IMG/VR virus record: IMGVR_UViG_3300013233_000093
Coordinates: 1-64,000 of that record
Strand: one strand, 5' to 3'
DNA length: 64,000 nucleotides
A program made the translations under genes and the position numbers. The notes beneath the pieces were generated by a model. It was not told the DNA's origin and ran no database searches. It saw nothing but the letters and a program-made list of their open reading frames with translations. Below are positions 19,634 through 59,360 of this stretch, piece after piece (position 1 is the stretch's first letter; every line of letters starts with the position of its first letter).

Positions 19634-19675
19634 ATTCAAAACTATATCACTATTATGATAACGTACTTTGTTATC
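19634..19675 (+). promoter_or_regulatory. Early promoter + stem-loop cassette
   Basis: ATTCAAAACTATATCACTATTATG followed by GATAAC-gtacttt-GTTATC. Confidence 0.85.
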
Positions 19676-19706
19676 TAACTTTAAACCAACCAAAGAGATT
19701 ATTAAC

Positions 19707-20066
19707 ATGAGTAACGAAATCGCTAAAGCTATTGTGGATGGAATGTCAATGGCAAATGATGCAATCACGACTGGGAACGAGTTATTCTTCAGCACCACCG
19801 AGGTGACGCCTGAGATGGTTGAGAAGGTAGACAGCGCGCGTAATGATTTCATCGCGGCTGCGTACACCGCTACGGCGGAGCAGCATTCAGGCCAAGCTAC
19901 ATTTGGAGGCGAGTTTGCCCTGGGCGGTGATGTGATACTGACCGTTGACATCAACGACGTCGATAGTTTGGACGATCGTGTTGTTGGTCATGTGGAGTAT
20001 CCGATGACGGATGCGTTGACCGAAGCCCGTAAGTGGGCGCTCGATAACCTCGAGTTTGATACCTAG
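19707..20066 (+). CDS. Acidic early hypothetical protein
   Basis: Start MSNEIAK downstream of promoter cassette. Confidence 0.75.
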   Translation: MSNEIAKAIVDGMSMANDAITTGNELFFSTTEVTPEMVEKVDSARNDFIAAAYTATAEQHSGQATFGGEFALGGDVILTVDINDVDSLDDRVVGHVEYPMTDALTEARKWALDNLEFDT

Positions 20067-20127
20067 AGTAATCCCACGGTACCGGTAATACTACCGGTGC
20101 CACTTCATACTAAAGAGAGTAAAGAAA

Positions 20128-20232
20128 ATGGATACAGAACAAGATGCGTATTGGGACGAGGTAGAAGACCTTATTGATGATTACAACGAACGCGACGAGC
20201 GTTCTTATGAAGGAGAATGTGAAGATGAGTAA
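20128..20232 (+). CDS. 34-aa highly acidic peptide (not in ORF track)
   Basis: MDTEQDAYWDEVEDLIDDYNERDERSYEGECEDE; stop overlaps next ATG. Confidence 0.6.
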   Translation: MDTEQDAYWDEVEDLIDDYNERDERSYEGECEDE

Positions 20233-21214
20233 AAACTGCATGGCGTTAATAGATGTGATTCACCCTGCTGTATTGGCTATGTTTGATAAGCCTAGTGAGG
20301 CGATTAACGATAGTGTGTTATTATCGCCAAACTTAGCCGTGACTTGTTTGGATGGTGAGCGCTGGGTGTTATCTGCACGGAACGGCTTCGGTAAGGGTTT
20401 ACTACACACCCCTAAAAGCTTTGAGATGACGGACGCGATGCTAGTCATCGTACAAGACGTTAAAGATGGATGGGGTCTTCACGCCAGGACAGACGTCCAC
20501 ATGGCCTGTCATTCAGATGGCTGTGACATTACATTTAAGAGCGATGGGGCGTATCCAATAACCATGCACCTGCGGAATTCGGGCGATGACTTGGAGTTTA
20601 TTAGTACAGATAGAACTTGCACGACTCTCGAGCTAAGTCCTAATATACACCCCATCGCGTGCATTCGGAAGGCGGTTGCGCTCGAATCTCTTTGCCGTAT
20701 ACGCACGTCAAGCATCGGCAAGTATCATATGCTTGCCGTGATTATGACGACGTTAAAGACACCCATCGGCTTCAATGACGAATGGTTTTACATTGACGAG
20801 GATACATTAGCGGCAATTGAATCCGTCTTGGTGACTGCGCGCGATCCCTATAACTTCGTCTTGTGGCATGAAGGATGCCTGAGGGTTCACACAGATACCC
20901 CGTGTAATAACTTTGTGCCTAACCGGTTTGACGTAGAACGCACGGCGTTCTCCGGAGTCGTATCCGTTAACTATGTAGAGGGACTGGTTTACGCCAACGG
21001 TTACGTGTACGACGCTGTAACTGGATATAAGTACAAGGTGCCGTTGTCGCGTACGGCGAAGTCCGTGGCTAAGCTGCTTAACATGCAGCGCTTCGACGGT
21101 GCTGATTTCGATATCTCCTACGAAGTACGTGGCACGAGACATGCACCCATAGAAGTGGTGCAAAACAATACACACCACCGCATTACATGGACAGATCGCG
21201 TGATTGATTTCTAG
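20225..21214 (+). CDS. Hypothetical protein
   Basis: AAGGAG RBS before ATG 20225 (MSKNCMAL). Confidence 0.75.
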   Translation: MSKNCMALIDVIHPAVLAMFDKPSEAINDSVLLSPNLAVTCLDGERWVLSARNGFGKGLLHTPKSFEMTDAMLVIVQDVKDGWGLHARTDVHMACHSDGCDITFKSDGAYPITMHLRNSGDDLEFISTDRTCTTLELSPNIHPIACIRKAVALESLCRIRTSSIGKYHMLAVIMTTLKTPIGFNDEWFYIDEDTLAAIESVLVTARDPYNFVLWHEGCLRVHTDTPCNNFVPNRFDVERTAFSGVVSVNYVEGLVYANGYVYDAVTGYKYKVPLSRTAKSVAKLLNMQRFDGADFDISYEVRGTRHAPIEVVQNNTHHRITWTDRVIDF

Positions 21215-21232
21215 ACGTTACTAGACGGCATA

Positions 21233-21281
21233 CACCCAGGAGCTATATAGCTCCTGGGTGCGTGTCTCTTTTTTTCTTTTT
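21233..21281. terminator. Terminator between convergent genes
   Basis: Perfect 28-bp palindrome CACCCAGGAGCTATATAGCTCCTGGGTG with T-tract. Confidence 0.85.
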
Positions 21282-21292
21282 ACATCAAGCGC

Positions 21293-22216
21293 TTATACCG
21301 CTGGATCTGGAGAAGTCCAAACTGCTGGAGCGTGTGCGCCAACTTCATTCAGTACTTTCTCGTAATCACCAGTGGTGCCGCCGCCTTTGACGCCTGCTTC
21401 GATCACGTCGTAAGACGCTGCGAGGCTAGCAGAGCGATAGCTCTGTTTGGTCAAGGTGTTGATGTAGTTCTGAGCGAACGCCAAGATATGGTCACCGATT
21501 TGAGTGGTGGCCGTATACTCGATGGTGTGCTCTACTACTTCGTTGGCATCTTGAATGACGCGTGAACCAGTCATAGCCCCAGATGTTTTAGGGATCATGT
21601 TGGTACACATCCATGCTGCAGTTACACGAGCCAGATCAACACTGGGTTCGATGAACAACATGGTCATTGCGATAGCATCAGGCAGGAACTCAGGATAACC
21701 TACTGCACGGTAAGCAGCCTTTGTGACCAGACCAGGATGAGTGGTCTCTGGATCGGCGATCAGCTCGATGATCCAATCCTGATGGAAGTTGTAGATAAAC
21801 ATCCCGTACTTTTCAGGGTACACGAATGCTGGCACGGTGCGTGCACGGCCGACCTTAATCGGAGTCTCGTGCATTTCACCTGCGTTGCTGACTTTGTGCT
21901 CAGCAAACTCAACGGTCAGTGTGGAATCGAAACCGGTGATTGAAGTGGCCATGGTCTCGACCATAGCTTTCAACAACTGTACACGATCCACGCCGTCGTC
22001 CATCAACAACATGTGACGAGGTGCTTCGACCAGTACTGGGATGATTTTCTGACGCACGTGAGTGGCAGATGACATCCAGTGACGTGGATCACTCATAGCA
22101 CCTTGCTGTCCACCGAACTTAGCGTTCAGTGCAGTAGTGCGACCTTTCGTAATCGAATGGTCTACGTTGATTAGCGGGTCATTGACGCGACCTGCGTATT
22201 TACGGTTTACGTTCAT
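21293..22216 (-). CDS. Tail tube protein (phiKZ gp30-like)
   Basis: GGQQG, EKYG, DPET, TMLFIEP, AWMCTNMIPK; directly downstream of sheath. Confidence 0.8.
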   Translation of the reverse strand: MNVNRKYAGRVNDPLINVDHSITKGRTTALNAKFGGQQGAMSDPRHWMSSATHVRQKIIPVLVEAPRHMLLMDDGVDRVQLLKAMVETMATSITGFDSTLTVEFAEHKVSNAGEMHETPIKVGRARTVPAFVYPEKYGMFIYNFHQDWIIELIADPETTHPGLVTKAAYRAVGYPEFLPDAIAMTMLFIEPSVDLARVTAAWMCTNMIPKTSGAMTGSRVIQDANEVVEHTIEYTATTQIGDHILAFAQNYINTLTKQSYRSASLAASYDVIEAGVKGGGTTGDYEKVLNEVGAHAPAVWTSPDPAV

Positions 22217-22230
22217 GTTAAGCTCCTAGA

Positions 22231-24261
22231 TCAAAGATCGCTTTTGCGGTGGACACTGACGTTCATGGTACCAACAGTACGCATGCTGTTAGCGTAAACT
22301 TCGGTGTTCATCACCCATGAATAACCACGAGCTTCATCTGCCTTAGTGAACGATGCATTCGGACGTACAACAACACGATCGTCGTAAATACCGTCGGTCA
22401 GTTCCAACATCAAGTTATCGCAAGTGGTGAGGAACTGGCTGTCACTCATGGTGCCATTACCAGTGACCATGCGCCACACTTGATCGGACTTCTTAACCAC
22501 GTCAACCGCGATCAACATAACGATGTCGCTGTTCAACACAGAAGTGTCGTTGTCGTAGATGGTCTGCATAGCAGGGAAGAACAAGGTGTTCATGTCCATG
22601 TACTGCACTGCATTCAAACCGATGTCCCAATCCGCAGAACGAACTGCACGAGGCTTCCATGCGTTAGCCACATCAACGATGTCTTTAAGCTGGTTAGCTG
22701 GAGCAACGTCGTATGCAAATGCGTTTTTGAACTTGCCGTTTCCTGCACCCATGTAACGTGCGCGTTTAACGATCAGGTCAACCACAACCGGGATGGCTTT
22801 GCCATACTTGTTATACAGTTTACGACCGGCACCGCCAACGATCACTGCACGGCAGGTAGGTGTGCCATGAATCACTGATTCAGGAACCAAACGACCAGTG
22901 GCACGCAAAGAGGTGGCAATGGAGGTTTCAGCAGAGATGGTGTTAACCGCTTGCAACACATCTTGAGGAGTCACTGCGACAGAGATGTCTGCACGGAACG
23001 CCATCAAGCCCAGAATGGCTTTCTTGGTGTCAATTGCAAAACCGGTGTCATACACGACAGAGAAAGGATACTTAGCGCGATCAACCAAAGGATCAGCCAC
23101 GTCTTCCCAACCATAGGAGCAAGCATCGAAAACCAAGGTGTTCAATTCTGCTTCAGAAACAGTACCGTCAGATCCACCTTTCAGGTAATGTGTGGTGGCA
23201 GCATTCAAGCTCAAGCCACCGTCAATACGTGCGGTAAACAGATCGTTACCCAGGCTGTCCAGGGTGTTGAACAAGTTGATGAAATCAGAACCGGTCACAG
23301 CAGTGTTCTGCAGGACTTCTTCGGCTTGGATCAAGTCAACGATGGTTTGGACGTTGTTGTCGTACACATACATTTCGTCAACAGGACCGAATGTAGGGGG
23401 TGTGCCATCAGCAGGTGTATTGGCATAGCTGCTCAATACACGATCGATGCTCAGGTCTTCACCGGTTTTGGTGTTCACTGCGCCTGCTTTCAAGCAGAAG
23501 TCGATGCTGGTAGACGCATCGATAGCGGCCAGGGTACGAGGAGTGCTCAGTGCGTCGTTACGTTCCATCCATGATGCACGGTACAGTGCAGCCATCTGGT
23601 CGTCCATGATGTCCATGTCAGCAGGAGTAGCTGTGTTTGGACCAGGGAAGCTCAGTTTGATGCCGACGTTATTGATGTAATCACCAACTCCACCTTTAAA
23701 GGCAAAGATAGGATACACGGTAGATGCTTGAGCCACACCGCCGACTGTGCCGGTCATGGTGCCAGCGAGTGCTGCTTCGCCACGCAAGTTAGCCAGATCA
23801 CTTAAAGGCTTGGTAGCCCATTTCAGGCGATAACCAGTTGTGCTGGTGGTTGCGAAGGTTTTCAAGCCACTTGCATCAAGTGTCACAGAACCGTCAGTGT
23901 TACGGACGTAATCCAAGATGTCATCTTTGACGACTTCCAGGGTAAATACCAAACTGCCGGCCGAAGAATCAGCAGGAACCAGTCGTTTCACGAAACACAT
24001 GTTGCCCGCGCCGATGGCCGCGGTCAAACCCATGGTAGCATGAGAGTAGTATTTAGAACGTTCGTCAAACGATTTGACGCCGTAAGTTTGTGCCAAGCCT
24101 TGGCCAATAGCTTGTGCGGTTAGGGGGCCGCGTTCAGCTTGGATGTAAAACAATGGGCAATGCTGCGGTACCGATAGGGGTTCTACTACTTCAGCGCGAG
24201 TTGAAGCGTCTCTGATCCCCTGTAGGCGAGATTCCGGCATTGCGTTTTTGATAGCGCTCAT
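22231..24261 (-). CDS. Contractile tail sheath protein (phiKZ gp29-like)
   Basis: LQGIRD, PQHCP, YLKGGSDGT, YDTGF, PESVIHGTPTCRA, FFPAMQTIYDNDTSVLNS; AAGGA RBS before ATG 24261. Confidence 0.9.
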   Translation of the reverse strand: MSAIKNAMPESRLQGIRDASTRAEVVEPLSVPQHCPLFYIQAERGPLTAQAIGQGLAQTYGVKSFDERSKYYSHATMGLTAAIGAGNMCFVKRLVPADSSAGSLVFTLEVVKDDILDYVRNTDGSVTLDASGLKTFATTSTTGYRLKWATKPLSDLANLRGEAALAGTMTGTVGGVAQASTVYPIFAFKGGVGDYINNVGIKLSFPGPNTATPADMDIMDDQMAALYRASWMERNDALSTPRTLAAIDASTSIDFCLKAGAVNTKTGEDLSIDRVLSSYANTPADGTPPTFGPVDEMYVYDNNVQTIVDLIQAEEVLQNTAVTGSDFINLFNTLDSLGNDLFTARIDGGLSLNAATTHYLKGGSDGTVSEAELNTLVFDACSYGWEDVADPLVDRAKYPFSVVYDTGFAIDTKKAILGLMAFRADISVAVTPQDVLQAVNTISAETSIATSLRATGRLVPESVIHGTPTCRAVIVGGAGRKLYNKYGKAIPVVVDLIVKRARYMGAGNGKFKNAFAYDVAPANQLKDIVDVANAWKPRAVRSADWDIGLNAVQYMDMNTLFFPAMQTIYDNDTSVLNSDIVMLIAVDVVKKSDQVWRMVTGNGTMSDSQFLTTCDNLMLELTDGIYDDRVVVRPNASFTKADEARGYSWVMNTEVYANSMRTVGTMNVSVHRKSDL

Positions 24262-24436
24262 TAAGATATCCTTAATCTGTATACAGGTCGAGGCGGGTGT
24301 TGTCAAACAGGCCCTTCTACCCACCACGATTGGATGAATTTATAGTAGCGATCTTATGCCGGTTAAAGGCATGTACGCCACTGCATAGTATAAATACTAA
24401 TGCACCCTAATTATTAATGAACGAGACGGACAGGCT

Positions 24437-25396
24437 ATGGATATCTACAGCGCTTTTATAAATAAGAAACAAGGTGGCGTGGCAAGCGTCGCTGTAAAGG
24501 TTATCGAAGAACAGTTAACCCTGGGCGGTTCGGATCGTTATACAGCAGTCACTGATGACAAACGTGTTTTGTTTTCAGGTGTGGATAATGACAAGCTTCC
24601 CCACTTTGGACATCCGGTTATCTACCATGAAAAGTGCTATGCTGATGCTCGTCCGTACCTGAAGGCAAACGGTGGCGTTAGAAACTCACTGGATTATGGC
24701 TTTCTGCGTAAGCGTGCAATTGTAACGTTATCGCAGTTCGAGAATCCTGATTTGTTTGAACACGTCATCATTCCACTGTGTGCGGTGTTTGGAGAATGGA
24801 TTAGCAGTACATTAGTCCAGCGCTTCGGCGGTAGTGTGGGTGACGGCGTCAAGTACAACGTGATTGCGGCTTCTTACTATGCTAAGTTAATCCTTGAGCA
24901 TACTGCACAATCGCAGGAATACAAGAAGTTGTGTTTGCAGAGTTCTCACGGCTATGTCGAATATCCTCCTGTTAAACGTTTGGAGATGGGGCATGACGCA
25001 TTAGCGGGATTGATCTTAAAGGTAACGGGTACTCGTGGAATCGGCGTTCCTGCAAGCTTTACGAACACATTGCTAGACGACGGTCTGCTGGAAGGTCTGG
25101 CAAAATCTGACGGCGATGTTCTTGGACTGGCCGATCTGATCAAAGCGTATTCAGAAACCGATCTCGGTGAGTTTACACACGCTACTCTAATGCGCGTCAC
25201 AAGTGGCGGAACGTGGATGGGTACGGATGCCGCTTCTTTAAGTGTGGCTGCGCTGGAATCGCCAATCGTGCTGTCTGCCATGATTGCACATGCCATGGAA
25301 ACCCCCAGCTATAAAAACAAAACCCGCATTGGCCGCGTCTGTAACAGTCTGTCACGTAAAGTGGATCTGGATACGGTCATTGCTATCACACGGTAG
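24437..25396 (+). CDS. Virion structural protein (phiKZ gp28-like)
   Basis: PHFGHP, DARPY, ALESP; divergent from sheath as in phiKZ. Confidence 0.65.
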   Translation: MDIYSAFINKKQGGVASVAVKVIEEQLTLGGSDRYTAVTDDKRVLFSGVDNDKLPHFGHPVIYHEKCYADARPYLKANGGVRNSLDYGFLRKRAIVTLSQFENPDLFEHVIIPLCAVFGEWISSTLVQRFGGSVGDGVKYNVIAASYYAKLILEHTAQSQEYKKLCLQSSHGYVEYPPVKRLEMGHDALAGLILKVTGTRGIGVPASFTNTLLDDGLLEGLAKSDGDVLGLADLIKAYSETDLGEFTHATLMRVTSGGTWMGTDAASLSVAALESPIVLSAMIAHAMETPSYKNKTRIGRVCNSLSRKVDLDTVIAITR

Positions 25397-25405
25397 GTAT
25401 ACACC

Positions 25406-27895: not shown

Positions 27896-27908
27896 AGGAA
27901 GTTAAAAA

Positions 27909-29570: not shown

Positions 29571-29572
29571 CC

Positions 29573-33900: not shown

Positions 33901-33944
33901 ATTCAAAACTATATCACTATTATGATGGACAACGTGTTGTTGTC
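33901..33944 (+). promoter_or_regulatory. Early promoter + stem-loop cassette
   Basis: Consensus followed by GACAAC-gtgtt-GTTGTC. Confidence 0.85.
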
Positions 33945-34566: not shown

Positions 34567-34620
34567 TATACTACAGTGCCATACGGCACTGTAGTATAGA
34601 CTTTCTTTATTTCTTTTTCT
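34567..34620 (+). terminator. Rho-independent terminator
   Basis: TATACTACAGTGCC-ATAC-GGCACTGTAGTATA followed by T-rich tail. Confidence 0.8.
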
Positions 34621-34633
34621 ATGCTTGCCAAAT

Positions 34634-34710
34634 ATTCAAAACTATATCACTATTATGATACTTAGGTAATAATACTTAAGTCGTTATTAGATCTCTTAGA
34701 GATCAAAGGA
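34634..34710 (+). promoter_or_regulatory. Early promoter with two-hairpin leader
   Basis: Consensus, then ACTTAGGTA-ataa-TACTTAAGT and GATCTC-tta-GAGATC. Confidence 0.85.
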
Positions 34711-38383: not shown

Positions 38384-38420
38384 ATTCAAAACTATATCAC
38401 TATTATGCACAATATTGATG
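38384..38420 (+). promoter_or_regulatory. Early promoter
   Basis: ATTCAAAACTATATCACTATTATG. Confidence 0.8.
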
Positions 38421-39092: not shown

Positions 39093-40991
39093 TTAATCGT
39101 CATCATCGTCCCATTCCAAACCAGCGTTGGATTGGTATTCAGTCACACGGGTTTCAAAGAAATTTTTTTCTTTCTTTAAAAGTGCCTGTTCGTCTAACCA
39201 TTCACATGCATTCGTTGCACCAGGAAAGGGTTCTTCCAAATGCAATGCACGTGCTCTTCGATTGGCCATGTAGTGGAACTGTGCAATGTGTTGATCCTTG
39301 GTGTAACCCAACATCGGTTTCTTAAGGATGTACCCAGCGTAATCACGTTCTACTTGTTCTGCCTCATCCCACATATCGCGGACTTCCTGTGGATCTAGAA
39401 CCACACCTTCTTCTTTGATGATCTGGTTTGCTACACGGATACCGAACGAAGCATGCATGACTTCATCCCGCATAATGTATTGCAACTGCTCACCAGTACC
39501 TTTCATAAGACCTCTACGCTGCAATGCGAAGATCGGAGTGAAACCGTTATAGAACCAACATCCCTCGAAGATGGCTGCGAAGAAGATGTACGACATGACA
39601 AACTCACGCAGGTGATCTGGATTGGTTAAGTCCAGTGTTTTAGACATGGAAGCTGCAAGTCGTTTTTCTGCCATCCGGATCTTAGCGTTGATCTCAGGCA
39701 CCACCAGATAACGATTATAGATCTCATCCTGATCTAACCCAATGGTCTCAATGCAATGTTGGTACGTCCATGTGTTACCGGACACAACCACTTTGCCGTC
39801 AAGACGAGTGATGATCACTCGGGAAGGTACACCTACGCTGTAGACATTACCATTGTACGCTTCTAGTGATTTCTGCAGCCGCAAGCCATTCACGCACGTG
39901 CGATGTTCAAAATGCACAGACGTGCCGTTCGGACGATCGTCTACATGCATGACAGTACCACACAGTGGTGCTAACGCACTGAAGGTTTCCTGCACACGTT
40001 TAAAGTCCCCGTACAGCACCCGACCCCAAGTCGTTAGTTCAGATAAAAGCTCCGTGCACTGACTGTAGTTTAAGGCAGGCAGGTACGCGCGCTCCAGCGA
40101 TTCCAACACGCATTGTAAAATCGTTGCGAAGTTTACAATTTTAAACCATGCACTGTTGGCATCGTCGCAGCCCATCTCATATTCGATATCACTCGTCTTA
40201 CAAAGCCACACCAATCTACTGATGGATCTTGGTTCGTGAAGAATCACATCGTGACCTTCAATGCTGGTGACGTGCGCTAGCGTGGCCACGGTCAGTCTCG
40301 TTTCGTTGTCGAGACTTACCCTGCGATTGTTGTTAAACGTTCTGGCACTGACGGGGAACCCGTGCTTTCCAAGCTCCAACTCGCCCGCTTTAGCAAGCGT
40401 CAGTTCAGTATCGTCAAAGTCGAAGTACGCACAGTTATGATTCGGAGTGACCTTAGTGAGATAATTGTCACCCGTGATGACTACAAGATTGCCCTCGTAG
40501 TGATCTTTGGTGACACCAAGATGGTTCACAAACGTGACTTTCCCGTTAGCATTAAAGTCCGCTACGGTATCAGTATCCGCAAGGTCTCTAAAGTCCACCC
40601 AACCACGACCGGTCAAGACTTCTGTGCCTTCCACGTAACAATGCAATGCTTCTTCGAACACCTGACGTGCTTGGTAAAGTTGCAGCTCCGGTGCAGTCAT
40701 GCGCTCCATGACGGCTAAACCGATGTTACGCATTGCCATAATGTCAGATGTAGTGAGGTACGCTAAGACGTTTTCGTACACATGACGCTCATTGTCGCTC
40801 AGTTTATGCCGAAAGTCATGCACGTCCTGCGTCATGTTCACGTCTAACGGCACCCAGTGGTTCTTATTGGCGTTGGTAAAATACGTAAACGCCCATGGAT
40901 ACTTGAAGGGCGCTAACTGGTTTATATTACCCTTGCCGTTTACAACTCTCTTGTCGGATGCACGTACACCCGATTTCTTTTCTTCGCTCAT
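39093..40991 (-). CDS. nrdB: Ribonucleotide reductase class I beta subunit (intein-containing)
   Basis: PFKYPWA, NHWVP, EEALH, EGCWFYNGF, YIMRDEVMH, KEKNFFETRVTEYQ; 343 aa after removing intein. Confidence 0.95.
   Translation of the reverse strand: MSEEKKSGVRASDKRVVNGKGNINQLAPFKYPWAFTYFTNANKNHWVPLDVNMTQDVHDFRHKLSDNERHVYENVLAYLTTSDIMAMRNIGLAVMERMTAPELQLYQARQVFEEALHCYVEGTEVLTGRGWVDFRDLADTDTVADFNANGKVTFVNHLGVTKDHYEGNLVVITGDNYLTKVTPNHNCAYFDFDDTELTLAKAGELELGKHGFPVSARTFNNNRRVSLDNETRLTVATLAHVTSIEGHDVILHEPRSISRLVWLCKTSDIEYEMGCDDANSAWFKIVNFATILQCVLESLERAYLPALNYSQCTELLSELTTWGRVLYGDFKRVQETFSALAPLCGTVMHVDDRPNGTSVHFEHRTCVNGLRLQKSLEAYNGNVYSVGVPSRVIITRLDGKVVVSGNTWTYQHCIETIGLDQDEIYNRYLVVPEINAKIRMAEKRLAASMSKTLDLTNPDHLREFVMSYIFFAAIFEGCWFYNGFTPIFALQRRGLMKGTGEQLQYIMRDEVMHASFGIRVANQIIKEEGVVLDPQEVRDMWDEAEQVERDYAGYILKKPMLGYTKDQHIAQFHYMANRRARALHLEEPFPGATNACEWLDEQALLKKEKNFFETRVTEYQSNAGLEWDDDDD
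39774..40640 (-). mobile_element. Intein (289 aa) in nrdB
   Basis: Begins CYVEGTEVLT...GW, has VTPNH block B, ends VYSVGVPS...VVVSGN before +1 Thr; interrupts EEALH|TWTY. Confidence 0.92.
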
Positions 40992-43641: not shown

Positions 43642-43711
43642 TGTAATTTCCTTTGCTTAGGTACATGATTCTAACCAGTGCAAAATTACAGGAATGGAGA
43701 AGTAAACAAGC

Positions 43712-43745
43712 CTATATCACTATTATGATAACGTACTTTGTTATC
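43712..43745 (+). promoter_or_regulatory. Early promoter + stem-loop cassette
   Basis: CTATATCACTATTATGATAACGTACTTTGTTATC, identical to the 19634 copy from the core onward. Confidence 0.8.
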
Positions 43746-48900: not shown

Positions 48901-48944
48901 ATTCAAAACTATATCACTATTATGATGGACAACGTGTTGTTGTC
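48901..48944 (+). promoter_or_regulatory. Early promoter + stem-loop cassette
   Basis: Consensus followed by GACAAC/GTTGTC hairpin. Confidence 0.85.
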
Positions 48945-50390: not shown

Positions 50391-50425
50391 TCCATTAACC
50401 ACTTTAATACTTCTGAGGATTGGAA

Positions 50426-51221: not shown

Positions 51222-51227
51222 CTTAAC

Positions 51228-51275
51228 TATATCACCCACGCTTAAGCGTGGGTGATATAACCATTTTTTATTTTT
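51228..51275 (+). terminator. Terminator (perfect 32-bp palindrome)
   Basis: TATATCACCCACGCTTAAGCGTGGGTGATATA with T-tract. Confidence 0.8.
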
Positions 51276-51283
51276 CACCGTTT

Positions 51284-51324
51284 ATTCAAAACTATATCAC
51301 TATTATGATAACGATCGTGTTATC
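51284..51324 (+). promoter_or_regulatory. Early promoter + stem-loop cassette
   Basis: Consensus followed by GATAAC-gatcgt-GTTATC. Confidence 0.85.
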
Positions 51325-51357
51325 TAACCTTTAAACTAACCAAAGAGTGATTGAATT

Positions 51358-52131: not shown

Positions 52132-52139
52132 GTACTATG

Positions 52140-52184
52140 CCACACCAGGCCGTGAAGCCTGGTGTGGTGCACTTTCTTTTTTTC
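52140..52184 (+). terminator. Rho-independent terminator
   Basis: CCACACCAGGC/GCCTGGTGTGG with T-tract. Confidence 0.8.
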
Positions 52185-52233
52185 TAAAAGGCGCGGTATT
52201 AACTGTATCCAGAATAAATAATCGAGAATTATT

Positions 52234-52686: not shown

Positions 52687-52697
52687 CGGAGATTATT

Positions 52698-53566: not shown

Positions 53567-53584
53567 CCCAATTAAGGATATATC

Positions 53585-53944
53585 GTGGACATAAAAACAT
53601 TAGAAACTCCGATCCCACAGGGAGATTATTTAACCCTGTACGCGGACGACTTATGGTTGCTGTCGGTGCCAAATAAGGTACTTACTTGCTATGAACTGGC
53701 CAGGTCTGATTTTAAGTTAGTGGTTTCCACCAACGACGTCGACCGCGTAACGGTTTACACCGACACCGCGACAGTCCATTGCGTGAATCGTAATCAACCA
53801 TCTCAAACGCATTACATCAATCGCCACATACCAAGCGATGTCAGCAAACCAGTGCATATAAGCATGTCTGATATACGAGATAACACCTGCACTCGATTTA
53901 CAAGCCGTAAGGTTTGCGGTTACACACTACTAGGACCATTGTAA
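53585..53944 (+). CDS. Hypothetical protein
   Basis: AAGGA RBS; TAATG coupling to thyA. Confidence 0.6.
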
Positions 53945-54738
53945 TGAAAGCGTATTTAGATCTGTTAGGGGACGTGCTGTTAACCGGACAGTCACGCGAC
54001 GACCGTACAAGCACAGGTACCATTTCTGTATTTGGCAGACAGGCGCGGTATAACCTAGAAAATGAATTCCCGTTGGTGACCACGAAGAAGGTCAACCTGC
54101 ACGCCATCATTCACGAGCTATTGTGGTTCTTGAAAGGTGACACCAATGTCAAATACCTGCAGGATAACAATGTCCGGATTTGGAATGAATGGGCAGCTGA
54201 AAATGGCGATCTAGGTCCCGTGTATGGAAAGCAGTGGCGATCGTGGACAGATAGCGAAGGCTGGAGTGTCGATCAGATCGGGGAAGTCATCGAATCCATT
54301 AAAACAAATCCTTTGTCCCGCAGGCATATTGTAACTGCCTGGAACCCGTCTGACCTAAATGACATGGCCTTGCCGCCATGTCATTTACTGTTTCAGTTTT
54401 ATGTCCGTGGGGACTATCTTGATTGCCAACTCTATCAGAGATCCGCTGACATGTTCTTAGGTGTACCGTTTAACATCGCGTCGTATGCGTTGTTAACTAT
54501 GATGATTGCACAAGTCACGGGGTTAAAGGCAGGTGAGTTTGTTCATACCTTGGGCGATGCACACATTTACACCAACCATACGGCACAGGTAAATACACAG
54601 CTACGTAGGTTGCCATGCAAGCCACCCCGCATGTTGTTAAATCCTTCTGTTACTAACATTGACGACTTTACATACGACGACTTTAAACTGACCGGTTATG
54701 AACCGTTCCCAGCATTGCGCGGAAAGGTAGCTGTGTGA
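53944..54738 (+). CDS. thyA: Thymidylate synthase
   Basis: [55 protein letters not shown]. Confidence 0.97.
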
Positions 54739-55232
54739 CCATAATACATGCGATAGTGGCGTTGGATTTAAACGACGTCATAGGAGATACCAGAACCAAC
54801 GATCTGCCCTGGCGTTCGCCGGGAGACCTTAAGAACTTCAAGCGCATAACGGACGGTGAGGTCATCGTCATGGGCAGGCGGACATTCGAGTCTTTGCCTA
54901 ACGGACCACTGCCAAATAGGCGTAACGTTGTAGTCTCTCGAACAATGACGAATATCCCAGGAGTAACGGTTATTCCTTCGATGAAAGGCTTTGGTAAACG
55001 GAGTGAACATAAACGCATCTTCATCATAGGAGGTGCAGGACTTTTTGCCGCAGCGTGGCATCGGATAGACTATCTGCACATGACCAGAATAGGCTTTCAT
55101 TCTCCAGGCGATTTGAGGTTTCCTATAACTAACCCTGAAAGTTATTTTACCAAAATAACAGAAGATGTTAATCTGGAACCTTACGGACACGTACCGGCGA
55201 TCTATTCGGTTTTCGAAAGGCGTGATCGTTAG
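54735..55232 (+). CDS. folA: Dihydrofolate reductase
   Basis: LPW...[37 protein letters not shown]; GTGA overlap with thyA. Confidence 0.93.
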
Positions 55233-55235
55233 ATT

Positions 55236-55278
55236 TTCAAAACTATATCACTATTATGATGGACAACGTGTTGTTGTC
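55236..55278 (+). promoter_or_regulatory. Early promoter + stem-loop cassette
   Basis: Consensus; 55227-55287 identical to 58489-58549. Confidence 0.85.
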
Positions 55279-55300
55279 TTTTAACTAGAGAGATTTTATT

Positions 55301-56152
55301 ATGGAACCGACACTAGAAGAACTTAAAGACATTCTCGTCACGATGTGCGAGGGACGCGGCACCCGATTAACTATCGTCCACGATCATCTGACGAAATGCA
55401 ACCGTTATCATAAAACGCGGTTTTGTAACGTCGGAAATGACCGCATGTTCGTAACGATCACTGCATCAGACGTACGCGTTGGCAAGCATGAACTGTGCAC
55501 ACTCGCCACCGTGCACGTGTATTTTGTAAACGAAAACGCCCGTGTTAATCCAAACTGGGATAAGGTGCGTGAATACGAACTGGTTCTCACCGAGCCATAC
55601 ATCGTCCCGTTGGACGCGCAGCTGGTGCTAGACTGGCCAGTCGTCACACATACTAACGGCGCTCTGACGTATAAGATAAACCCTTCAACATACCTCGCAG
55701 TTGAAGACACTACCTGGTTAAAGCACGGTCGTTGGAATGGCGGTCATGTTGAGGTAACTGATACGTCAACTGAACCGCACAAGATGGCTGTAGATGTGGC
55801 TGCCTTATTAAAGACTTATAGTGCGCCAGAAGGTAACTTCGATGACTATGTCACCGGCGTTTCAAAACTGGCGTTTAACAATAAGATTACTGCCATATGT
55901 ACCCCACAGATTACCTTTATACGCGAATCGACATCGGAGACATTTCACGATTATGACGTCTACGCAGTCATTGCCTCCGACGAATACATCGTAATACCGG
56001 TAATTTCTCCATGCCCTAAGTTAGATACCCCACCGGTTATAGTGGATAACGGCACTAGAATCATGTTTGGAGATGGTAGTTTTTGGTCGTTAGCCACATT
56101 CTTATTGGCAATGACTATCGAACCCGTAAATAAGGCACTGCCTGACGATTAG
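55301..56152 (+). CDS. Hypothetical early protein
   Basis: 283-aa ORF after promoter. Confidence 0.7.
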   Translation: MEPTLEELKDILVTMCEGRGTRLTIVHDHLTKCNRYHKTRFCNVGNDRMFVTITASDVRVGKHELCTLATVHVYFVNENARVNPNWDKVREYELVLTEPYIVPLDAQLVLDWPVVTHTNGALTYKINPSTYLAVEDTTWLKHGRWNGGHVEVTDTSTEPHKMAVDVAALLKTYSAPEGNFDDYVTGVSKLAFNNKITAICTPQITFIRESTSETFHDYDVYAVIASDEYIVIPVISPCPKLDTPPVIVDNGTRIMFGDGSFWSLATFLLAMTIEPVNKALPDD

Positions 56153-56214
56153 AAATACAAGAAGCAAAAAACCAATAACGGGAATTAGCCCGTTATAAAC
56201 AGGAGAAGATTAAA

Positions 56215-56346
56215 ATGCAATACATTAATTGGTTATTGATGGTAATCCCGGCACTACTGACTCCACTGGCTGCTATAGCTGGTGTATGGATCGCGGTGGT
56301 TTGTCCAATCAGAGTGAGTAAAGATTGCCTACGTAAGGAGGGTTAA
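56215..56346 (+). CDS. 43-aa single-TM peptide
   Basis: AGGAG RBS; MQYINWLLMVIPALLTPLAAIAGVWIAVVCPIRVSKDCLRKEG. Confidence 0.55.
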   Translation: MQYINWLLMVIPALLTPLAAIAGVWIAVVCPIRVSKDCLRKEG

Positions 56347-56348
56347 TT

Positions 56349-56540
56349 GTGATATTTTATCACTACGCAAGTGAGCAGTATCCAGAGTTATTATCCAAGC
56401 AGGCACAGGGCGGCCCGACGAACGCAGATTTAAAAGAGTAAATTCGAATGTCTGTGTTTAGAGGTTATCCCGCATCGTATGAGAAACACATATCCCTGTT
56501 TATAGAACCACCTCCCTTTAAAGAGTTACCGAGTATATAA
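56349..56540 (+). pseudogene. Probable pseudogene with in-frame TAA
   Basis: AAGGAGG RBS; MIFYHYASEQYPELLSKQAQG...LKE*IRMSVFRGYPASYEKHISLFIEPPP...; stop at 56439. Confidence 0.55.
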
Positions 56541-56620
56541 TGACTTACCCTAAAAACGGTAAGATCAAAGTAAGTAAAACAAGACGCATTGTCTTATAAC
56601 CCAAAAGAAGGATTAGAATT

Positions 56621-57136
56621 ATGACAGCCATAATCGCGTCGTACAAAGATGGTTATTACCATCTCACAGCCGACACTTGTGTTTCCATGACCGGGTATGT
56701 TAGTACTTGGACAAAGGTATTTAGTACGCAGTACGCCGCAGTAGCGATCTCTGGTAGTGCAGGGATTTGCACACGCGTTGCAACGCGCGCACTGGCCGCG
56801 CACGACGGTTCTGATATCGAGGCACTGCTTGCGGACTTACAGAAACGCGCCGGTATATACCATGACAGCAAAACGGAGGTTTACCTCACAGTCATCCACG
56901 CTACCGGGATTTACGCAATAAGTACGTCAGATACCCGCGCTTACGGCGACATAACGTTCACCGCCGGAAGCGGTGCGGATGCAGTTCTTGTAGCGTTAAC
57001 CGCAGCTAGTCGTCTTGGCAAGTTCAAAACGGAATTAGAGCGCCACGCGTTTGCAATGAAGCAGGCTGCACGCTGGGAACCCAGCGTTAATGCTAAAGTA
57101 GATCAGGTATCCATCAAAGCAGGAGACGCAGTATGA
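56621..57136 (+). CDS. Proteasome-beta/HslV-like Ntn hydrolase (N-terminal Thr)
   Basis: M-T start, LTADT, TKVF, AISGSAG, AGSGA: canonical Thr1/Asp17/Lys33/GSG pattern. Confidence 0.75.
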   Translation: MTAIIASYKDGYYHLTADTCVSMTGYVSTWTKVFSTQYAAVAISGSAGICTRVATRALAAHDGSDIEALLADLQKRAGIYHDSKTEVYLTVIHATGIYAISTSDTRAYGDITFTAGSGADAVLVALTAASRLGKFKTELERHAFAMKQAARWEPSVNAKVDQVSIKAGDAV

Positions 57137-57651
57137 TTTTCACTCACAACGACGGCAAATCTTTGTTGGTCTACGCGAATGAATATAATTCCGTGGAGCT
57201 TATTGAGCCAGATGACTACTCGATCCACGAGGCAGATAATGCGTCGATTACGTCGGGCTACACTAACTCATTTACGGCGTTGGTAAAACGTCATATGACG
57301 GATAAATACGCCAGCCAGCCATGCGCATACACAGCAGCCATGGTGTTCAAAGATGAGTTAATTGCAATAGCCAAGCACTATGAATTAGACATTACCAAGA
57401 TGTCACACTTCGTAGTTAGATTGGGTAATGAGATGGTGCAGATTGCAGACACCGACATTTACATTGACGACTCAGAAGTCAGCACGTTGAACTGTTCAAC
57501 TGCATTGGTGTATCTTACATCGATCAAAGATCTTATCCCTGGTATAACAAAGGCACGTACGCGTAAGCTTATGCTGGAGCATCTTGAAAACGATCTCCCG
57601 CAGACAAACCCGCCGTTCATAAAGGTGTTTAAGTTTAAGAAAGGCAGGTAA
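57133..57651 (+). CDS. Hypothetical protein, probable inactive Ntn-fold paralog
   Basis: ATGA overlap; same length and collinear similarity to upstream gene; lacks Thr1. Confidence 0.55.
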   Translation: MIFTHNDGKSLLVYANEYNSVELIEPDDYSIHEADNASITSGYTNSFTALVKRHMTDKYASQPCAYTAAMVFKDELIAIAKHYELDITKMSHFVVRLGNEMVQIADTDIYIDDSEVSTLNCSTALVYLTSIKDLIPGITKARTRKLMLEHLENDLPQTNPPFIKVFKFKKGR

Positions 57652-57655
57652 GCGC

Positions 57656-57704
57656 ATATCACCTAGGCCATACGGCCTAGGTGATATATGTGGTCTTTTC
57701 TTTT
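57656..57704. terminator. Terminator between convergent genes
   Basis: ATATCACCTAGGCC-ATAC-GGCCTAGGTGATAT with T-rich tail. Confidence 0.8.
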
Positions 57705-58447
57705 TATCTGGAAATCCGTAATCCGGTTAGAGCGTAATGCTGATCTTTATTAGCCATGATGGTGATCTTTCTCCATCGTTTTAAATGAGTCGTCCGTAGC
57801 AACTCAAAGGAGTCTGAGTAAGAATCTATAATCTCCCGCTTTTTGCCAGAACTCGCCCCGCCGTTCATGTACATGTACGTACTGTTTAGACTGAGTTCTT
57901 TATGAATAAACCCTTTCTCCGCTAACACGGCCATATCACCATAAAGTAACTTAGTGGAGTTTGCCATATTACGCATCTCGGCGTCATTCTCCATGCGACA
58001 TCTTAACCCGATGTGGATATAAGGTATACGCTTTGGACTGGCAATGGTGTTCGGTACCGGCATATACACTGCAGTAGAGCCTTGGTAGTTAGGACTGCCG
58101 CTGACCATACCACCTGTGTTTCCACCGTACTCAGAGGAGTAACCATACTCCAGTGTAAAGACTTCGGTAATGTCTCTGCCCTGTCTAATACGAGGTGGTA
58201 TGAAGATAGCAGTCCCCGTTTGAAACTCTCGTCTAGGTAGTCCTGTAATGTCCAGCGTTTCCACATCGCCAGAAGCGATGTTTAAATCCGGTGTAAGGAT
58301 GCCGTTAATCGTATCTCGGATAATACGACTTTCCAGACTGCTGTAGTCAAACCCTGTGCCTTCAGATGCAGTATGTGCATCCGCTAACAGTTCCTTTGGT
58401 ATCTCTTGATAAATTCGATTAAGTGCATAGTCAATATGAGTGCCCAT
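57704..58447 (-). CDS. Conserved phiKZ-family protein usually found near phuZ
   Basis: IDYALNRIYQEIPKELL...SLESRI...DLNIASG, LRCRMEND, REIIDSYSD. Confidence 0.65.
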   Translation of the reverse strand: MGTHIDYALNRIYQEIPKELLADAHTASEGTGFDYSSLESRIIRDTINGILTPDLNIASGDVETLDITGLPRREFQTGTAIFIPPRIRQGRDITEVFTLEYGYSSEYGGNTGGMVSGSPNYQGSTAVYMPVPNTIASPKRIPYIHIGLRCRMENDAEMRNMANSTKLLYGDMAVLAEKGFIHKELSLNSTYMYMNGGASSGKKREIIDSYSDSFELLRTTHLKRWRKITIMANKDQHYALTGLRISR

Positions 58448-58497
58448 AATACATACCCCATTGTAAATTCATATGATCGTCCTGTGTCCGTTAGATT

Positions 58498-58540
58498 TTC
58501 AAAACTATATCACTATTATGATGGACAACGTGTTGTTGTC
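58498..58540 (+). promoter_or_regulatory. Early promoter + stem-loop cassette
   Basis: Consensus followed by GACAAC/GTTGTC hairpin. Confidence 0.85.
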
Positions 58541-58563
58541 TTTTAACTATAGGTTTATGTGAT

Positions 58564-59250
58564 ATGAACGAAGTTAGTAGTGTAGCAGAAGCTTTGGTAT
58601 TAATAAGGATGGATGAATGTAAGTTAAGTTCGATCCCTGTAGATTATCGTACACACACCGTCTGTCTCGCCGCGGTTACGAAAGATGCGTCTTGCCTCGC
58701 CAGCGTCCCAGAAGAGGTCATGTGCAAGTCCATTATAATGGCAAGTGGTGCGTGGACGCGTGCCGTAAACGGCACAACGGAGCTTATTTTAACAGTAAGC
58801 AGCGATGACATATCCAGGAATGTCTTACAGGCAATGTGTGAAGTTATGGAAGCGGTCGTTATTTTAAGCCAATGCGCACCCGGCGACCCAGCTGCGCCGG
58901 GACCACGCACCGTATTTCCACTAGAAAATAAACCATTAGATGATTTGTTGAACGCAGCAGATAATGATTTTCTAGACGATACGCAGGCAGGCAGTGAACT
59001 GGATGAATTGTTTGACTGCAGCGGTGACACCACCGCAATGTTATTTCCAAAGCTCACACCGTCCAAGATCCGCTGCATGAGTTTCTATGGTGACATAAAC
59101 AAGCCGTCAAACACAGCATTGCCCGTCAACGCAGATGCAAGCCGTGCGGTAAATGCAATACTTGATTCGGTTAGTACGATAAAGCATATCAGTGACACCG
59201 TGCGACTTAGCGATGCAACGCTGGATCGTATATCCAAGATGCTTAAGTAG
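58564..59250 (+). CDS. Protein with N-terminal DUF4116-like repeats
   Basis: LSSIPVDYRTHTVCLAAV...LASVPEE. Confidence 0.65.
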   Translation: MNEVSSVAEALVLIRMDECKLSSIPVDYRTHTVCLAAVTKDASCLASVPEEVMCKSIIMASGAWTRAVNGTTELILTVSSDDISRNVLQAMCEVMEAVVILSQCAPGDPAAPGPRTVFPLENKPLDDLLNAADNDFLDDTQAGSELDELFDCSGDTTAMLFPKLTPSKIRCMSFYGDINKPSNTALPVNADASRAVNAILDSVSTIKHISDTVRLSDATLDRISKMLK

Positions 59251-59266
59251 TCATAACTAATATAGC

Positions 59267-59306
59267 GTGTAGTGACGTCAGTCACTGCATGTTATTTTTT
59301 ATTTTT
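59267..59306 (+). terminator. Rho-independent terminator
   Basis: GTGTAGTGAC-GTCA-GTCACTGCAT with T-tract. Confidence 0.7.
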
Positions 59307-59314
59307 CACCGTTT

Positions 59315-59360
59315 ATTCAAAACTATATCACTATTATGATGGACAACGTGTTGTCATCAT
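59315..59360 (+). promoter_or_regulatory. Early promoter + stem-loop upstream of phuZ
   Basis: Consensus followed by ATGATGGACAAC-gt-GTTGTCATCAT. Confidence 0.85.

What the first reader, a model, noticed from the sequence alone, without database searches (positions are those of the whole stretch)
19657..59360. Compensatory base changes in the hairpin directly after the early promoter
Seen: the stem is GATAAC/GTTATC at 19657, 43727 and 51307 but GACAAC/GTTGTC at 33928, 48928, 55262, 58524 and 59342 (T-A to C-G), with four different loops. Structure is conserved over sequence. Inference: a 5'-terminal RNA hairpin stabilising early mRNA, or a DNA hairpin used by the virion RNAP as in N4.
Basis: partly seen in the sequence, partly recalled or inferred. 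Interest (0 to 1): 0.6.

Follow-up and report, generated by a model that had tools for sequence, protein, structure and literature searches.

The report
Stem-loops starting jumbo-phage early transcripts
In this giant phiKZ-like phage, most early promoters are followed at once by a short inverted repeat that most likely folds as a hairpin at the very 5' end of the early mRNAs; this is a familiar kind of RNA element in a setting where it has not been described.

Summary
The window is the first 64 kb of a complete 222.9-kb phiKZ-like jumbo phage with two sets of multisubunit RNA polymerase genes.

The repeated motif is a chimallivirus-type early promoter, TATATYAY-N6-G. It occurs 34 times on the + strand and once on the - strand. 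By homology with AR9 and phiKZ, the invariant G straight after the motif is the predicted start site, so the stems begin at +1 to +5.

28 of 34 promoters carry such a stem-loop, in about six unrelated sequence families. Between classes A and B, one base pair runs U-A, U.G, C-G. The folds beat dinucleotide shuffles: z about -6 for distinct sequences and -3.6 for one representative per family. Only the sense-strand RNA folds in every class; the template DNA strand does not fold in two classes.

The N4-type DNA hairpin reading fails. Here the hairpin lies downstream of the start, the polymerase is multisubunit, and the stems are AT-rich and variable.

The single compensatory pair has no statistical power alone (197 of 500 shuffles match it). 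No start-site or RNA data exist for this phage.

Three relatives (BONAISHI, sm033, Phobos) show similar 5' hairpins; phiKZ and AR9 do not.

Best reading: a 5'-proximal RNA stem-loop that protects early mRNA. The function is inferred, not shown.

The parts
16183..16204 (+). Early promoter of the second flavour (TATATTAC-TTTAGT), predicted +1 = G16205.
   Evidence: TATATYAY-N6-G scan: 34 on + strand, 1 on - strand
16207..16230 (+). Class C 5' stem-loop: 10 bp with two to three G.U pairs, loop AUAA. It is built from a direct repeat of the quasi-palindrome TACTTAGGT.
   Evidence: RNA -8.5 kcal/mol, z -4.2.: as DNA -1.7 on the + strand and 0 on the - strand.: 7 copies, all at promoters.
19635..19656 (+). 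Early promoter (TTCAAAAC-TATATCAC-TATTAT), predicted +1 = G19657
19657..19675 (+). Class A stem-loop starting at +1: GATAAC(G)/(U)GTTATC, 6 Watson-Crick pairs plus one G.U
   Evidence: -4.6 kcal/mol, z -5.6, 0 of 200 shuffles as good
33902..33923 (+). Early promoter, predicted +1 = G33924
33927..33945 (+). Class B stem-loop starting at +4/+5: (G)GACAAC/GTTGTC(U), loop GUGUU, followed by U3-4
   Evidence: -7.2 kcal/mol, z -3.2
34635..34656 (+). Early promoter, predicted +1 = G34657.
34660..34681 (+). Class C variant stem-loop. Here U6-A23 replaces the U.G pair of the other copies.
   Evidence: -7.4 kcal/mol, z -3.4
38385..38406 (+). Early promoter, predicted +1 = G38407, with no 5' hairpin and a short 37-nt leader
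   Evidence: -2.1 kcal/mol, z +0.19.: leader length.
43705..43726 (+). Early promoter with a divergent upstream part, predicted +1 = G43727
43727..43745 (+). Class A stem-loop, identical to the one at 19657
48902..48923 (+). Early promoter, predicted +1 = G48924
48927..48945 (+). Class B stem-loop
51285..51306 (+). Early promoter, predicted +1 = G51307, preceded by a terminator-like hairpin and T run
51307..51324 (+). Class A stem-loop with a different loop (GAUCGU)
   Evidence: -4.0 kcal/mol, z -2.0
55236..55257 (+). Early promoter, predicted +1 = G55258
55261..55279 (+). Class B stem-loop
58498..58519 (+). Early promoter, predicted +1 = G58520
58523..58541 (+). Class B stem-loop
59316..59337 (+). 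Early promoter in front of the PhuZ tubulin gene (59445-60494), predicted +1 = G59338
   Evidence: phrog_4733, E 7.7e-43.
59338..59358 (+). Degenerate class B copy. The bulged alternative fold from +1 is weak.
   Evidence: -3.9 kcal/mol, z -0.47

Best explanation
The repeated motif is the early promoter of a chimallivirus (phiKZ-like jumbo phage), read by the injected multisubunit virion RNA polymerase. Its architecture is TATATYAY, a 6-nt spacer, then an invariant G that is the predicted transcription start. The inverted repeats are therefore the first 18-27 nt of the early transcripts. In the RNA they fold into a stem-loop that begins at +1 (classes A and D, and the single-copy stem at 116300) or at +3 to +5 (classes B and C, and the stem at 175385).

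The most likely role is the known one for such elements. Keeping the 5' end base-paired, or nearly so, slows 5'-end-dependent decay by pyrophosphohydrolase and RNase E. Early messages made before the phage has disarmed the host would then last longer.

Shown here: the promoter architecture and its strand bias, the stems, their significance against shuffles, the sense-strand specificity, and similar hairpins in three relatives. Inferred: the exact start site, the early timing, that the RNA rather than the DNA is the selected form, and the stabilising function.
For: Promoter identity:
- The genome is complete (direct terminal repeats, 100%) and encodes two sets of multisubunit RNAP genes, phiKZ gp29PR and DUF7193, and PhuZ.
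- TATATYAY-N6-G occurs 34 times on the + strand and once on the - strand.
- One copy (153388) has a different spacer but keeps the spacing and the G.

Start site:
- AR9 early promoters are AAATATATATTAT-N6-G(+1). phiKZ and phiR1-37 start 6 nt after the consensus (PMC5312081).
- In the AR9 and phiKZ sequences that G is usually followed by A and then T or A, as it is here: G in 24 of 24, A in 22 of 24, T in 21 of 24.
- The same pattern is strand-biased in five relatives: 12:0, 9:0, 7:0, 0:6 and 8:0.

Structure:
- 28 of 34 leaders have a stem-loop starting at +1 to +5, in about six unrelated stem sequences.
- The folds beat shuffles.
- The class A/B stem and the class C stem occur nowhere else in the genome.

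RNA rather than DNA:
- 14 of 15 distinct leaders fold better as sense RNA than as the complement. The asymmetry is -36.4 against -13.8 +/- 5.9 for shuffles.
- Classes C and B' do not fold on the template DNA strand: 0 and -0.1 kcal/mol.
- The pair series U-A, U.G, C-G is all present.

Relatives:
- 5' folds beat shuffles in BONAISHI (-43.0 vs -26.7 +/- 5.6), sm033 (-32.1 vs -15.4 +/- 4.9) and Phobos (-37.6 vs -21.2 +/- 4.5).
- BONAISHI shows an A-U to G-C swap between homologous leaders.

Function by analogy: 5' stem-loops protect bacterial mRNAs (Emory et al. 1992, as cited in PMC7509114).
Against: - No transcript data exist for this phage, so +1 is only predicted.
- The most common class (B/B', 12 copies) leaves 3 nt unpaired at the 5' end.
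- The stems are weak: -4 to -9 kcal/mol.
- 6 of 34 promoters have no hairpin. These are mostly the ones with leaders under 40 nt.
- Some of the strongest inverted repeats continue 1-3 bp upstream of the predicted +1. This is seen at 71420 here and in sm033, pir03 and phiKZ. RNA cannot use those pairs.
- When the promoter is included in the fold there is no sharp boundary at +1.
- Copies within a class are identical, so they are duplicates, not independent evidence.
- With one representative per family the strand asymmetry is only z -2.0.
- Within the A/B family the covariation is not significant.
- The G.U pairs of class C may be a by-product of a direct repeat of a quasi-palindrome.
- Early 5' ends of phiKZ and AR9 are not structured overall.
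Confidence: 0.55

Rival explanations
1. DNA-level element. The inverted repeat acts in the DNA, either as an extruded hairpin or cruciform or as a downstream promoter element read by the virion RNAP during initiation or escape, in the spirit of N4.
For: The repeats abut the promoter at every copy. Within class B the sequence is identical through +25, which fits a sequence-read element. Some repeats extend 1-3 bp upstream of the predicted +1.
Against: - As DNA the hairpins are marginal: -1.6 to -5 kcal/mol. On the template strand, classes C and B' do not fold at all.
- The stems are AT-rich, and they vary in sequence, length and loop.
- 6 of 34 promoters lack them.
- N4 hairpins are GC-rich, centred at -11, and read by a single-subunit enzyme. 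This phage has multisubunit RNAPs, and its giant ORF is tail-fibre-like.
Confidence: 0.1
2. Binding site for a sequence-specific regulator. One form is a palindromic operator for a repressor that shuts off early transcription. Another is an RNA hairpin bound by a phage translational or decay regulator, one per leader class.
For: Within a class the stems are strictly conserved while the loops vary: class A has three loops, and the second hairpin of class C leaders has six. Early genes need to be shut off.
Against: - Half-site spacing varies (5, 6 and 7 nt in A/B, 3-4 nt in other classes).
- The stem sequences fall into about six unrelated families, so one protein cannot read them all.
- B' and C are not symmetrical in duplex DNA, where they give G.T and A.C mismatches.
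- No candidate regulator was identified.
Confidence: 0.12
3. No selected function. The hairpins ride along with promoter-leader cassettes that spread by duplication or gene conversion, and the inverted repeats are historical accidents such as duplicated quasi-palindromes.
For: - Copies within classes are identical far beyond the stem.
- Class C is a direct repeat of TACTTAGGT.
- Covariation within A/B is not significant.
- phiKZ and AR9 do without such hairpins.
Against: - About six unrelated stems sit at the same place.
- Family representatives still beat shuffles, reached by 1 of 1000.
- The changes seen keep pairing: U-A, U.G, C-G, and U.G to U-A in class C.
- Three distant relatives have their own 5' hairpins, with a compensatory swap in BONAISHI.
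Confidence: 0.15
4. Promoter-proximal attenuator. The class B hairpin followed by U3-4 terminates or pauses the polymerase after about 25-30 nt.
For: Class B stems are followed by TTT or TTTT. phiKZ makes many short RNAs derived from 5' UTRs by premature termination (PMC10914365).
Against: - Classes A, C and D have no U run.
- The stems are short and AT-rich, unlike the GC-rich phiKZ terminator motif.
- Genuine terminator-like hairpins with long T runs lie upstream of the promoters, not downstream.
Confidence: 0.04

Closest known systems
Early (virion RNAP) promoters of phiKZ-like jumbo phages: phiKZ TATATTAC-N6-G and AR9 AAATATATATTAT-N6-G
   Same: The core is the same (TATATYAY), with the same 6-nt spacer, G at +1 followed by A and then T or A, strong strand bias and dozens of copies. 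The genome has two multisubunit RNAP sets.
   Different: The upstream part (TTCAAAAC abutting the core) and the fully conserved TATTAT spacer are particular to this phage. phiKZ and AR9 early leaders are not structured overall (z -1.5 and -0.7). Timing and start site are not measured here.
5'-terminal stabilising stem-loops of bacterial and phage mRNAs, of the ompA type (Emory, Bouvet and Belasco 1992)
   Same: A short stem-loop sits at or within a few nt of the 5' end. Its sequence is free as long as it pairs, and it lies well upstream of the ribosome binding site.
   Different: Here it is a serial feature of about 28 transcripts made by a phage polymerase. No half-life data exist. Class B leaves 3 nt unpaired. 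From memory, the ompA work tolerated only about 2-4 unpaired nt; I could not check that against the paper.
N4 virion RNAP hairpin promoters
   Same: A virion-carried RNA polymerase and an inverted repeat next to the start site.
   Different: In N4 the hairpin is GC-rich, centred at -11, has conserved bases, is read on the template strand, and needs gyrase and SSB; the enzyme is a single-subunit 3500-aa protein. Here the repeat is downstream of +1, AT-rich, variable and dispensable at some promoters, and the RNAP is multisubunit.
5' leaders of Vibrio phages BONAISHI and vB_VpaM_sm033 and Erwinia phage Phobos (the nearest relatives found, about 25% protein identity)
   Same: They have TATATYAY-N6-GA promoters on one strand only. 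A subset of their leaders has stems starting at or near +1 that beat shuffles, and BONAISHI shows a compensatory A-U/G-C swap.
   Different: The stem sequences are unrelated, and a smaller fraction of promoters carries them. None has mapped start sites that I could find.

Membership tests
Chimallivirus (phiKZ-type) virion-RNAP early promoter | Highly conserved AT-rich element centred near -10 (TATATTAC or TATATTAT type), with many copies in the genome | tested here: met
   TATATYAY-N6-G occurs 34 times on the + strand and once on the - strand. The 15-mer has 10 exact copies in the window, and no shuffle reached 11.
Chimallivirus (phiKZ-type) virion-RNAP early promoter | Transcription starts 6 nt downstream of the element, at a conserved G | not testable with these tools
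   The G is invariant and the spacing is kept even when the spacer sequence differs (153388). No RNA run holds this phage.
Chimallivirus (phiKZ-type) virion-RNAP early promoter | The genome encodes virion and non-virion multisubunit RNAP sets | tested here: met
   Beta-like genes lie at window 7049-12974 (phrog_2986 and phrog_3148). Beta'-like and beta-like matches lie at 74.5 and 85 kb.
Chimallivirus (phiKZ-type) virion-RNAP early promoter | Drives genes expressed early, independently of host RNAP and of protein synthesis | not testable with these tools
   Context only. The promoters sit before PhuZ, an SbcC-like gene, many small ORFs with no family hit, and 3 kb upstream of the 74.5-kb RNAP gene. 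The motif is absent from the virion-gene block at 24-34 kb.
5'-terminal stabilising RNA stem-loop (ompA type) | Stem-loop at, or within a few nucleotides of, the transcript 5' end | tested here: inconclusive
   Stems start at +1 to +5 of the predicted start. The start is not mapped, and class B leaves 3 nt free.
5'-terminal stabilising RNA stem-loop (ompA type) | Structure matters rather than sequence | tested here: met
   About six unrelated stems sit at the same place. The series U-A, U.G, C-G is present, and the folds are specific to the sense strand. The within-family covariation test has no power.
5'-terminal stabilising RNA stem-loop (ompA type) | Prolongs mRNA half-life | not testable with these tools
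   This needs half-life measurements.
N4-type DNA hairpin promoter | Giant single-subunit virion RNAP | tested here: not met
   The 2346+ aa ORF is tail-fibre-like (phrog_3201). The RNAP genes are beta/beta'-like.
N4-type DNA hairpin promoter | GC-rich hairpin with conserved bases centred at -11, upstream of +1 | tested here: not met
   The repeats lie downstream of the conserved motif and of the predicted +1. They are AT-rich and variable.
N4-type DNA hairpin promoter | Stable hairpin on the template strand | tested here: not met
   Template-strand DNA folds are 0 kcal/mol for class C and -0.1 for class B'.
Palindromic operator of a dimeric DNA-binding protein | Fixed half-site sequence and spacing, symmetrical in duplex DNA | tested here: not met
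   Spacers are 5, 6 and 7 nt in A/B and 3-4 nt elsewhere. Half-sites are unrelated between classes. B' and C are asymmetric.
Intrinsic terminator or attenuator | GC-rich stem followed by a U tract | tested here: not met
   Only class B has U3-4. The stems are AT-rich, and classes A, C and D have no U run.
Any curated RNA family (Rfam 15) | Match at the gathering score | tested here: not met
   No match in the window.

The most novel reading that the evidence does not exclude
5'-terminal stem-loops may be a functional signature of virion-RNAP transcripts in a sizeable branch of the nucleus-forming jumbo phages: this phage, BONAISHI, sm033 and Phobos. They could do more than slow decay. For example, they could mark early messages for export from the early infection compartment, for preferential translation, or for shielding the triphosphate end from host sensors. 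The exact abutment to +1 would then reflect a requirement of the phage's own machinery.
Probability: 0.15. Interest if true: 0.7.

Novelty: new member of a known kind. Interest (0 to 1): 0.45.

Why it matters
Early transcripts of nucleus-forming jumbo phages are made by an injected polymerase, before the phage has any protection or control over host RNases. How those first messages survive and get translated is not known.

A serial 5' stem-loop on about 80% of predicted early transcripts, echoed in three distant relatives, is a concrete and cheap hypothesis to test. It also gives compact promoter-leader cassettes for phage engineering.

If the stems have no effect, the finding reduces to the annotation of 34 early promoters in an uncultured chimallivirus.

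Tried and rejected
- Close relatives for real covariation analysis. Megablast against phages found nothing. A protein-guided scan of viral contigs found nothing. Exact promoter words in viral contigs and metagenomes gave only single chance copies with no homologous flanks.
- RNA evidence. Only one microbial-mat DNA run holds half of the words, and no RNA run holds the phage.
- Literature. A full-text search for TATATTAC gave only noise. The phiKZ transcriptome paper of 2014 is not held. No supplements with start-site tables are held. The phiKZ dRNA-seq and phiR1-37 papers do not use the words hairpin or stem-loop at all. The 201phi2-1 and phiKZ ONT-cappable-seq papers use them in the passages shown only for terminators and sRNA folds, never for early leaders.
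- Alternative start register. Treating TATTAT as the -10 element puts +1 seven nt later. I rejected this because that position is a pyrimidine in 19 of 24 copies, whereas the G after TATTAT is invariant. In addition, copy 153388 changes TATTAT but keeps the spacing.
- Pairing profile including the promoter. It gave no sharp boundary at +1 and is uninformative.
- Histogram of stem starts across eight phages. It was spread from -3 to +8 with no single peak.
- MAFFT alignment of the A/B stems. It put the gap inside the 3' arm of class B, so pairs 5 and 6 were counted for class A only.
- First genes downstream of the promoters. Pfam and PHROGs gave no hits except PhuZ. The 633-aa protein behind promoter 71420 has no PDB relative by sequence.


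Full report
WHAT THE WINDOW IS

The window is bases 1-64000 of a single-contig virus record of 222,906 bases. The record has direct terminal repeats and is estimated to be 100% complete.

It is a phiKZ-like (chimallivirus) jumbo phage:
- Pfam finds phiKZ gp29PR and DUF7193.
- PHROGs finds multisubunit RNAP beta-like genes at 7049-8689 and 8634-12974.
- A second set of beta'-like and beta-like genes lies at 74.5 and 85 kb.
- PhuZ tubulin is at 59445-60494.

The nearest phages in the public collection are Vibrio jumbo phages, at only about 25% protein identity.

THE OBSERVATION

All eight sites read as the finding says. The 15-mer CTATATCACTATTAT has 10 exact + strand copies in the window, and no shuffle of 100 reached 11 matches. 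It has 24 copies with at most 2 mismatches in the genome, all on the + strand.

The copy at 34642 has a different, longer stem. The copy at 38392 has no hairpin.

At 59342 the two arms are 2 nt apart and cannot pair. The alternative bulged fold is no better than shuffles.

The two stem versions are also in different registers. GATAAC begins immediately after TATTAT, whereas GACAAC begins four bases later.

THE PROMOTER AND THE START SITE

AR9 early promoters are AAATATATATTAT-N6-G(+1). phiKZ and phiR1-37 start 6 nt after their consensus (PMC5312081). The motifs are AT-rich and centred at about -10 (PMC7598289).

I checked this on the records themselves:
- AR9 has 35 matches, and the transcripts mostly start GAT or GAA.
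- phiKZ has 33 + strand copies of TATATTAC, against 10-12 in controls. About 24 of them are followed by N5-T-G-A-(T/A).

In this phage the same core, TATATCAC, is followed by the six bases TATTAT and then G-A-T. The G is present in 24 of 24 copies, the A in 22 and the T in 21.

A scan for TATATYAY-N6-G gives 34 hits on the + strand and 1 on the - strand. It adds:
- one copy with another spacer (TTAAGG) but the same spacing and G;
- a second promoter flavour (TATATTAC-TTTAGT-G) at 16205, 64245, 98469, 121466 and 182484;
- four further single copies at 68613, 79241, 91488 and 175385.

The same pattern is strictly strand-biased in five relatives.

The G right after the motif is therefore the predicted +1. 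The other register, with TATTAT as the -10 element, puts the start on a pyrimidine in 19 of 24 copies, so I rejected it. No RNA data exist to confirm the prediction.

THE STEMS

From the predicted +1, 28 of 34 leaders carry a stem-loop that starts at +1 to +5.

| Class | Stem | Loop | Start | Copies |
|---|---|---|---|---|
| A | GATAAC/GTTATC | three different loops | +1 | 5 |
| B | GACAAC/GTTGTC | GUGUU | +4/+5 | 7 |
| B' | GATAAC/GTTGTC (U.G pair) | GUGUU | +4/+5 | 4 |
| B, degenerate (59338) | arms 2 nt apart | - | - | 1 |
| C | 9-10 bp with two or three G.U pairs | AUAA | +1 to +4 | 7 |
| D (71420) | 8 bp, one U.G | GCU | +1 | 1 |
| single stem at 116300 | interrupted 8-bp stem | 5 nt | +2 | 1 |
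| single stem at 175385 | 8 bp, three G.U | 4 nt | +3 | 1 |

The class A/B stem and the class C stem occur nowhere else in the genome.

Most leaders without a hairpin are short (9-37 nt). Those with one are 40-107 nt, and the ribosome binding site lies at least 15 nt beyond the stem.

STATISTICS

- Summed MFE of +1..+30 for 15 distinct leaders is -76.3, against -37.7 +/- 6.3 for dinucleotide shuffles.
- With one representative per family, including the five unstructured families, it is -56.4 against -35.9 +/- 5.7. One of 1000 shuffles reached this.
- Against random genome windows the excess is marginal (p 0.054), because coding sequence is richer in G+C than these leaders.
- The formal pair count on the A/B family gives 100% pairing and one pair changed on both sides. 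With five distinct rows, 197 of 500 shuffles do as well.

The case rests on unrelated stems sitting at the same place.

RNA OR DNA

14 of 15 distinct leaders fold better as sense RNA than as the complement, and none folds worse. The summed difference is -36.4 against -13.8 +/- 5.9 in shuffles. With family representatives the asymmetry is weaker, at z -2.0.

| Form | Fold (kcal/mol) |
|---|---|
| DNA, + strand | -1.6 to -5.0 |
| DNA, template strand, class C | 0 |
| DNA, template strand, class B' | -0.1 |
| Sense RNA, all classes | -4.6 to -8.5 (z -3.2 to -5.6) |

All mismatches inside stems are G.U on the sense strand, and none is A.C.

There are three caveats:
- The G.U pairs of class C could stem from its origin as a direct repeat of the quasi-palindrome TACTTAGGT.
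- A few of the strongest repeats continue 1-3 bp upstream of the predicted +1.
- Folding with the promoter included shows no sharp boundary at +1.

RELATIVES

Early leaders of phiKZ and AR9 are not structured overall: -42.9 vs -33.4 +/- 6.4 and -29.1 vs -25.2 +/- 5.8.

Three relatives do show structure:
- BONAISHI: -43.0 vs -26.7 +/- 5.6
- sm033: -32.1 vs -15.4 +/- 4.9
- Phobos: -37.6 vs -21.2 +/- 4.5

Several of their stems start at +1. Two homologous BONAISHI leaders differ by an A-U to G-C swap. pir03 and Yong MS32 are not significant.

The phiKZ dRNA-seq and phiR1-37 papers never use the words hairpin or stem-loop. The 201phi2-1 and phiKZ ONT-cappable-seq papers use them in the passages shown only for terminators and sRNA folds. 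No passage found in the AR9 paper concerns leader structure, although I did not search it for those two words.

WHAT IT IS NOT

- It is not an N4-type promoter.
- It is not a palindromic operator, because spacing and half-sites vary.
- It is not a terminator, because only class B has a short U run. True terminator-like hairpins with long T runs lie upstream of the promoters.
- It is not an Rfam family.

MECHANISM

The virion RNAP starts at the G, and the first 18-27 nt fold as soon as they emerge. A paired or nearly paired 5' end is a poor substrate for 5'-end-dependent decay. This is the known effect of 5' stem-loops (Emory et al. 1992, as cited in PMC7509114). From memory, that work tolerated only about 2-4 unpaired nt at the 5' end. 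Class B, with 3 free nt, is at that edge.

This would favour the first messages of the infection. It is inference, and I put it at 0.55.

The rivals are a DNA-level role (0.10), a class-specific binding site (0.12), hitch-hiking with duplicated cassettes (0.15) and an attenuator (0.04).

VERDICT

This is a new instance of a known kind of element in a setting where it has not been described, and it is of moderate interest.

Noticed in passing
window 16183-16230; genome 64245, 98469, 121466, 182484: A second early-promoter flavour (TATATTAC-TTTAGT-G, with a different upstream part) is always followed by the class C leader.
   Followed up: yes
window 16250-16267 and 34690-34704; five more in the genome: Class C leaders (about 75 nt, 7 copies) carry a second stem-loop, GATCTCT-loop-(A)GAGATC, right before the ribosome binding site. 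The stems are conserved and there are six different loops. This could be a structured regulatory leader.
   Followed up: partly
window 7049-8689 and 8634-12974 (+): Two multisubunit RNAP beta-like genes (phrog_2986, phrog_3148) have no early motif upstream, so they are probably the virion RNAP set. The second set, at 74.5 and 85 kb, sits behind early promoters 71420 and 79241, as expected for the non-virion enzyme.
   Followed up: partly
window 3-7040 (-): An ORF of 2346+ aa, tail-fibre-like (phrog_3201), has no stop before the left end of a record classed as having direct terminal repeats. The record start therefore seems to cut a gene.
   Followed up: no
window 39093-40991 (-): The ribonucleotide reductase small subunit is 632 aa, and its Pfam match is split into two stretches (best 409-591 on profile 98-276 of 281). 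This may be an insertion such as an intein or a homing endonuclease.
   Followed up: no
leaders of the 34 promoters, e.g. window 19676-19690 and 51325-51340: TTTAAC occurs in 11 of 34 leaders, against 122 on the whole + strand. Class A leaders contain TAACTTTAA. From memory, the same 9-mer occurs in the 'epsilon' translational enhancer of the T7 gene 10 leader; I did not verify this.
   Followed up: partly
window about 16135-16165, 34570-34625, 51235-51280, 59265-59310: Terminator-like hairpins followed by long T runs lie directly upstream of several early promoters, so these are insulated transcription units.
   Followed up: partly
genome 68613-70121 and 91488-93053: Two paralogous genes of about 500 aa have TATATTAC-N6-G promoters only 9 nt before the ATG, so their transcripts would be nearly leaderless, with the Shine-Dalgarno-like GAGGA or AAGGA straddling the predicted start.
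   Followed up: no
genome 167007-167117: A 36-codon ORF for a hydrophobic peptide lies 17 nt after early promoter 166990. A related short leader sits at 214144.
   Followed up: no
L108, L114, L117 (Vibrio phage BONAISHI 136282, 210207, 274691): Three BONAISHI early leaders share a stem starting at +1, with an A-U to G-C swap at pair 7-19 between two of them.
   Followed up: partly
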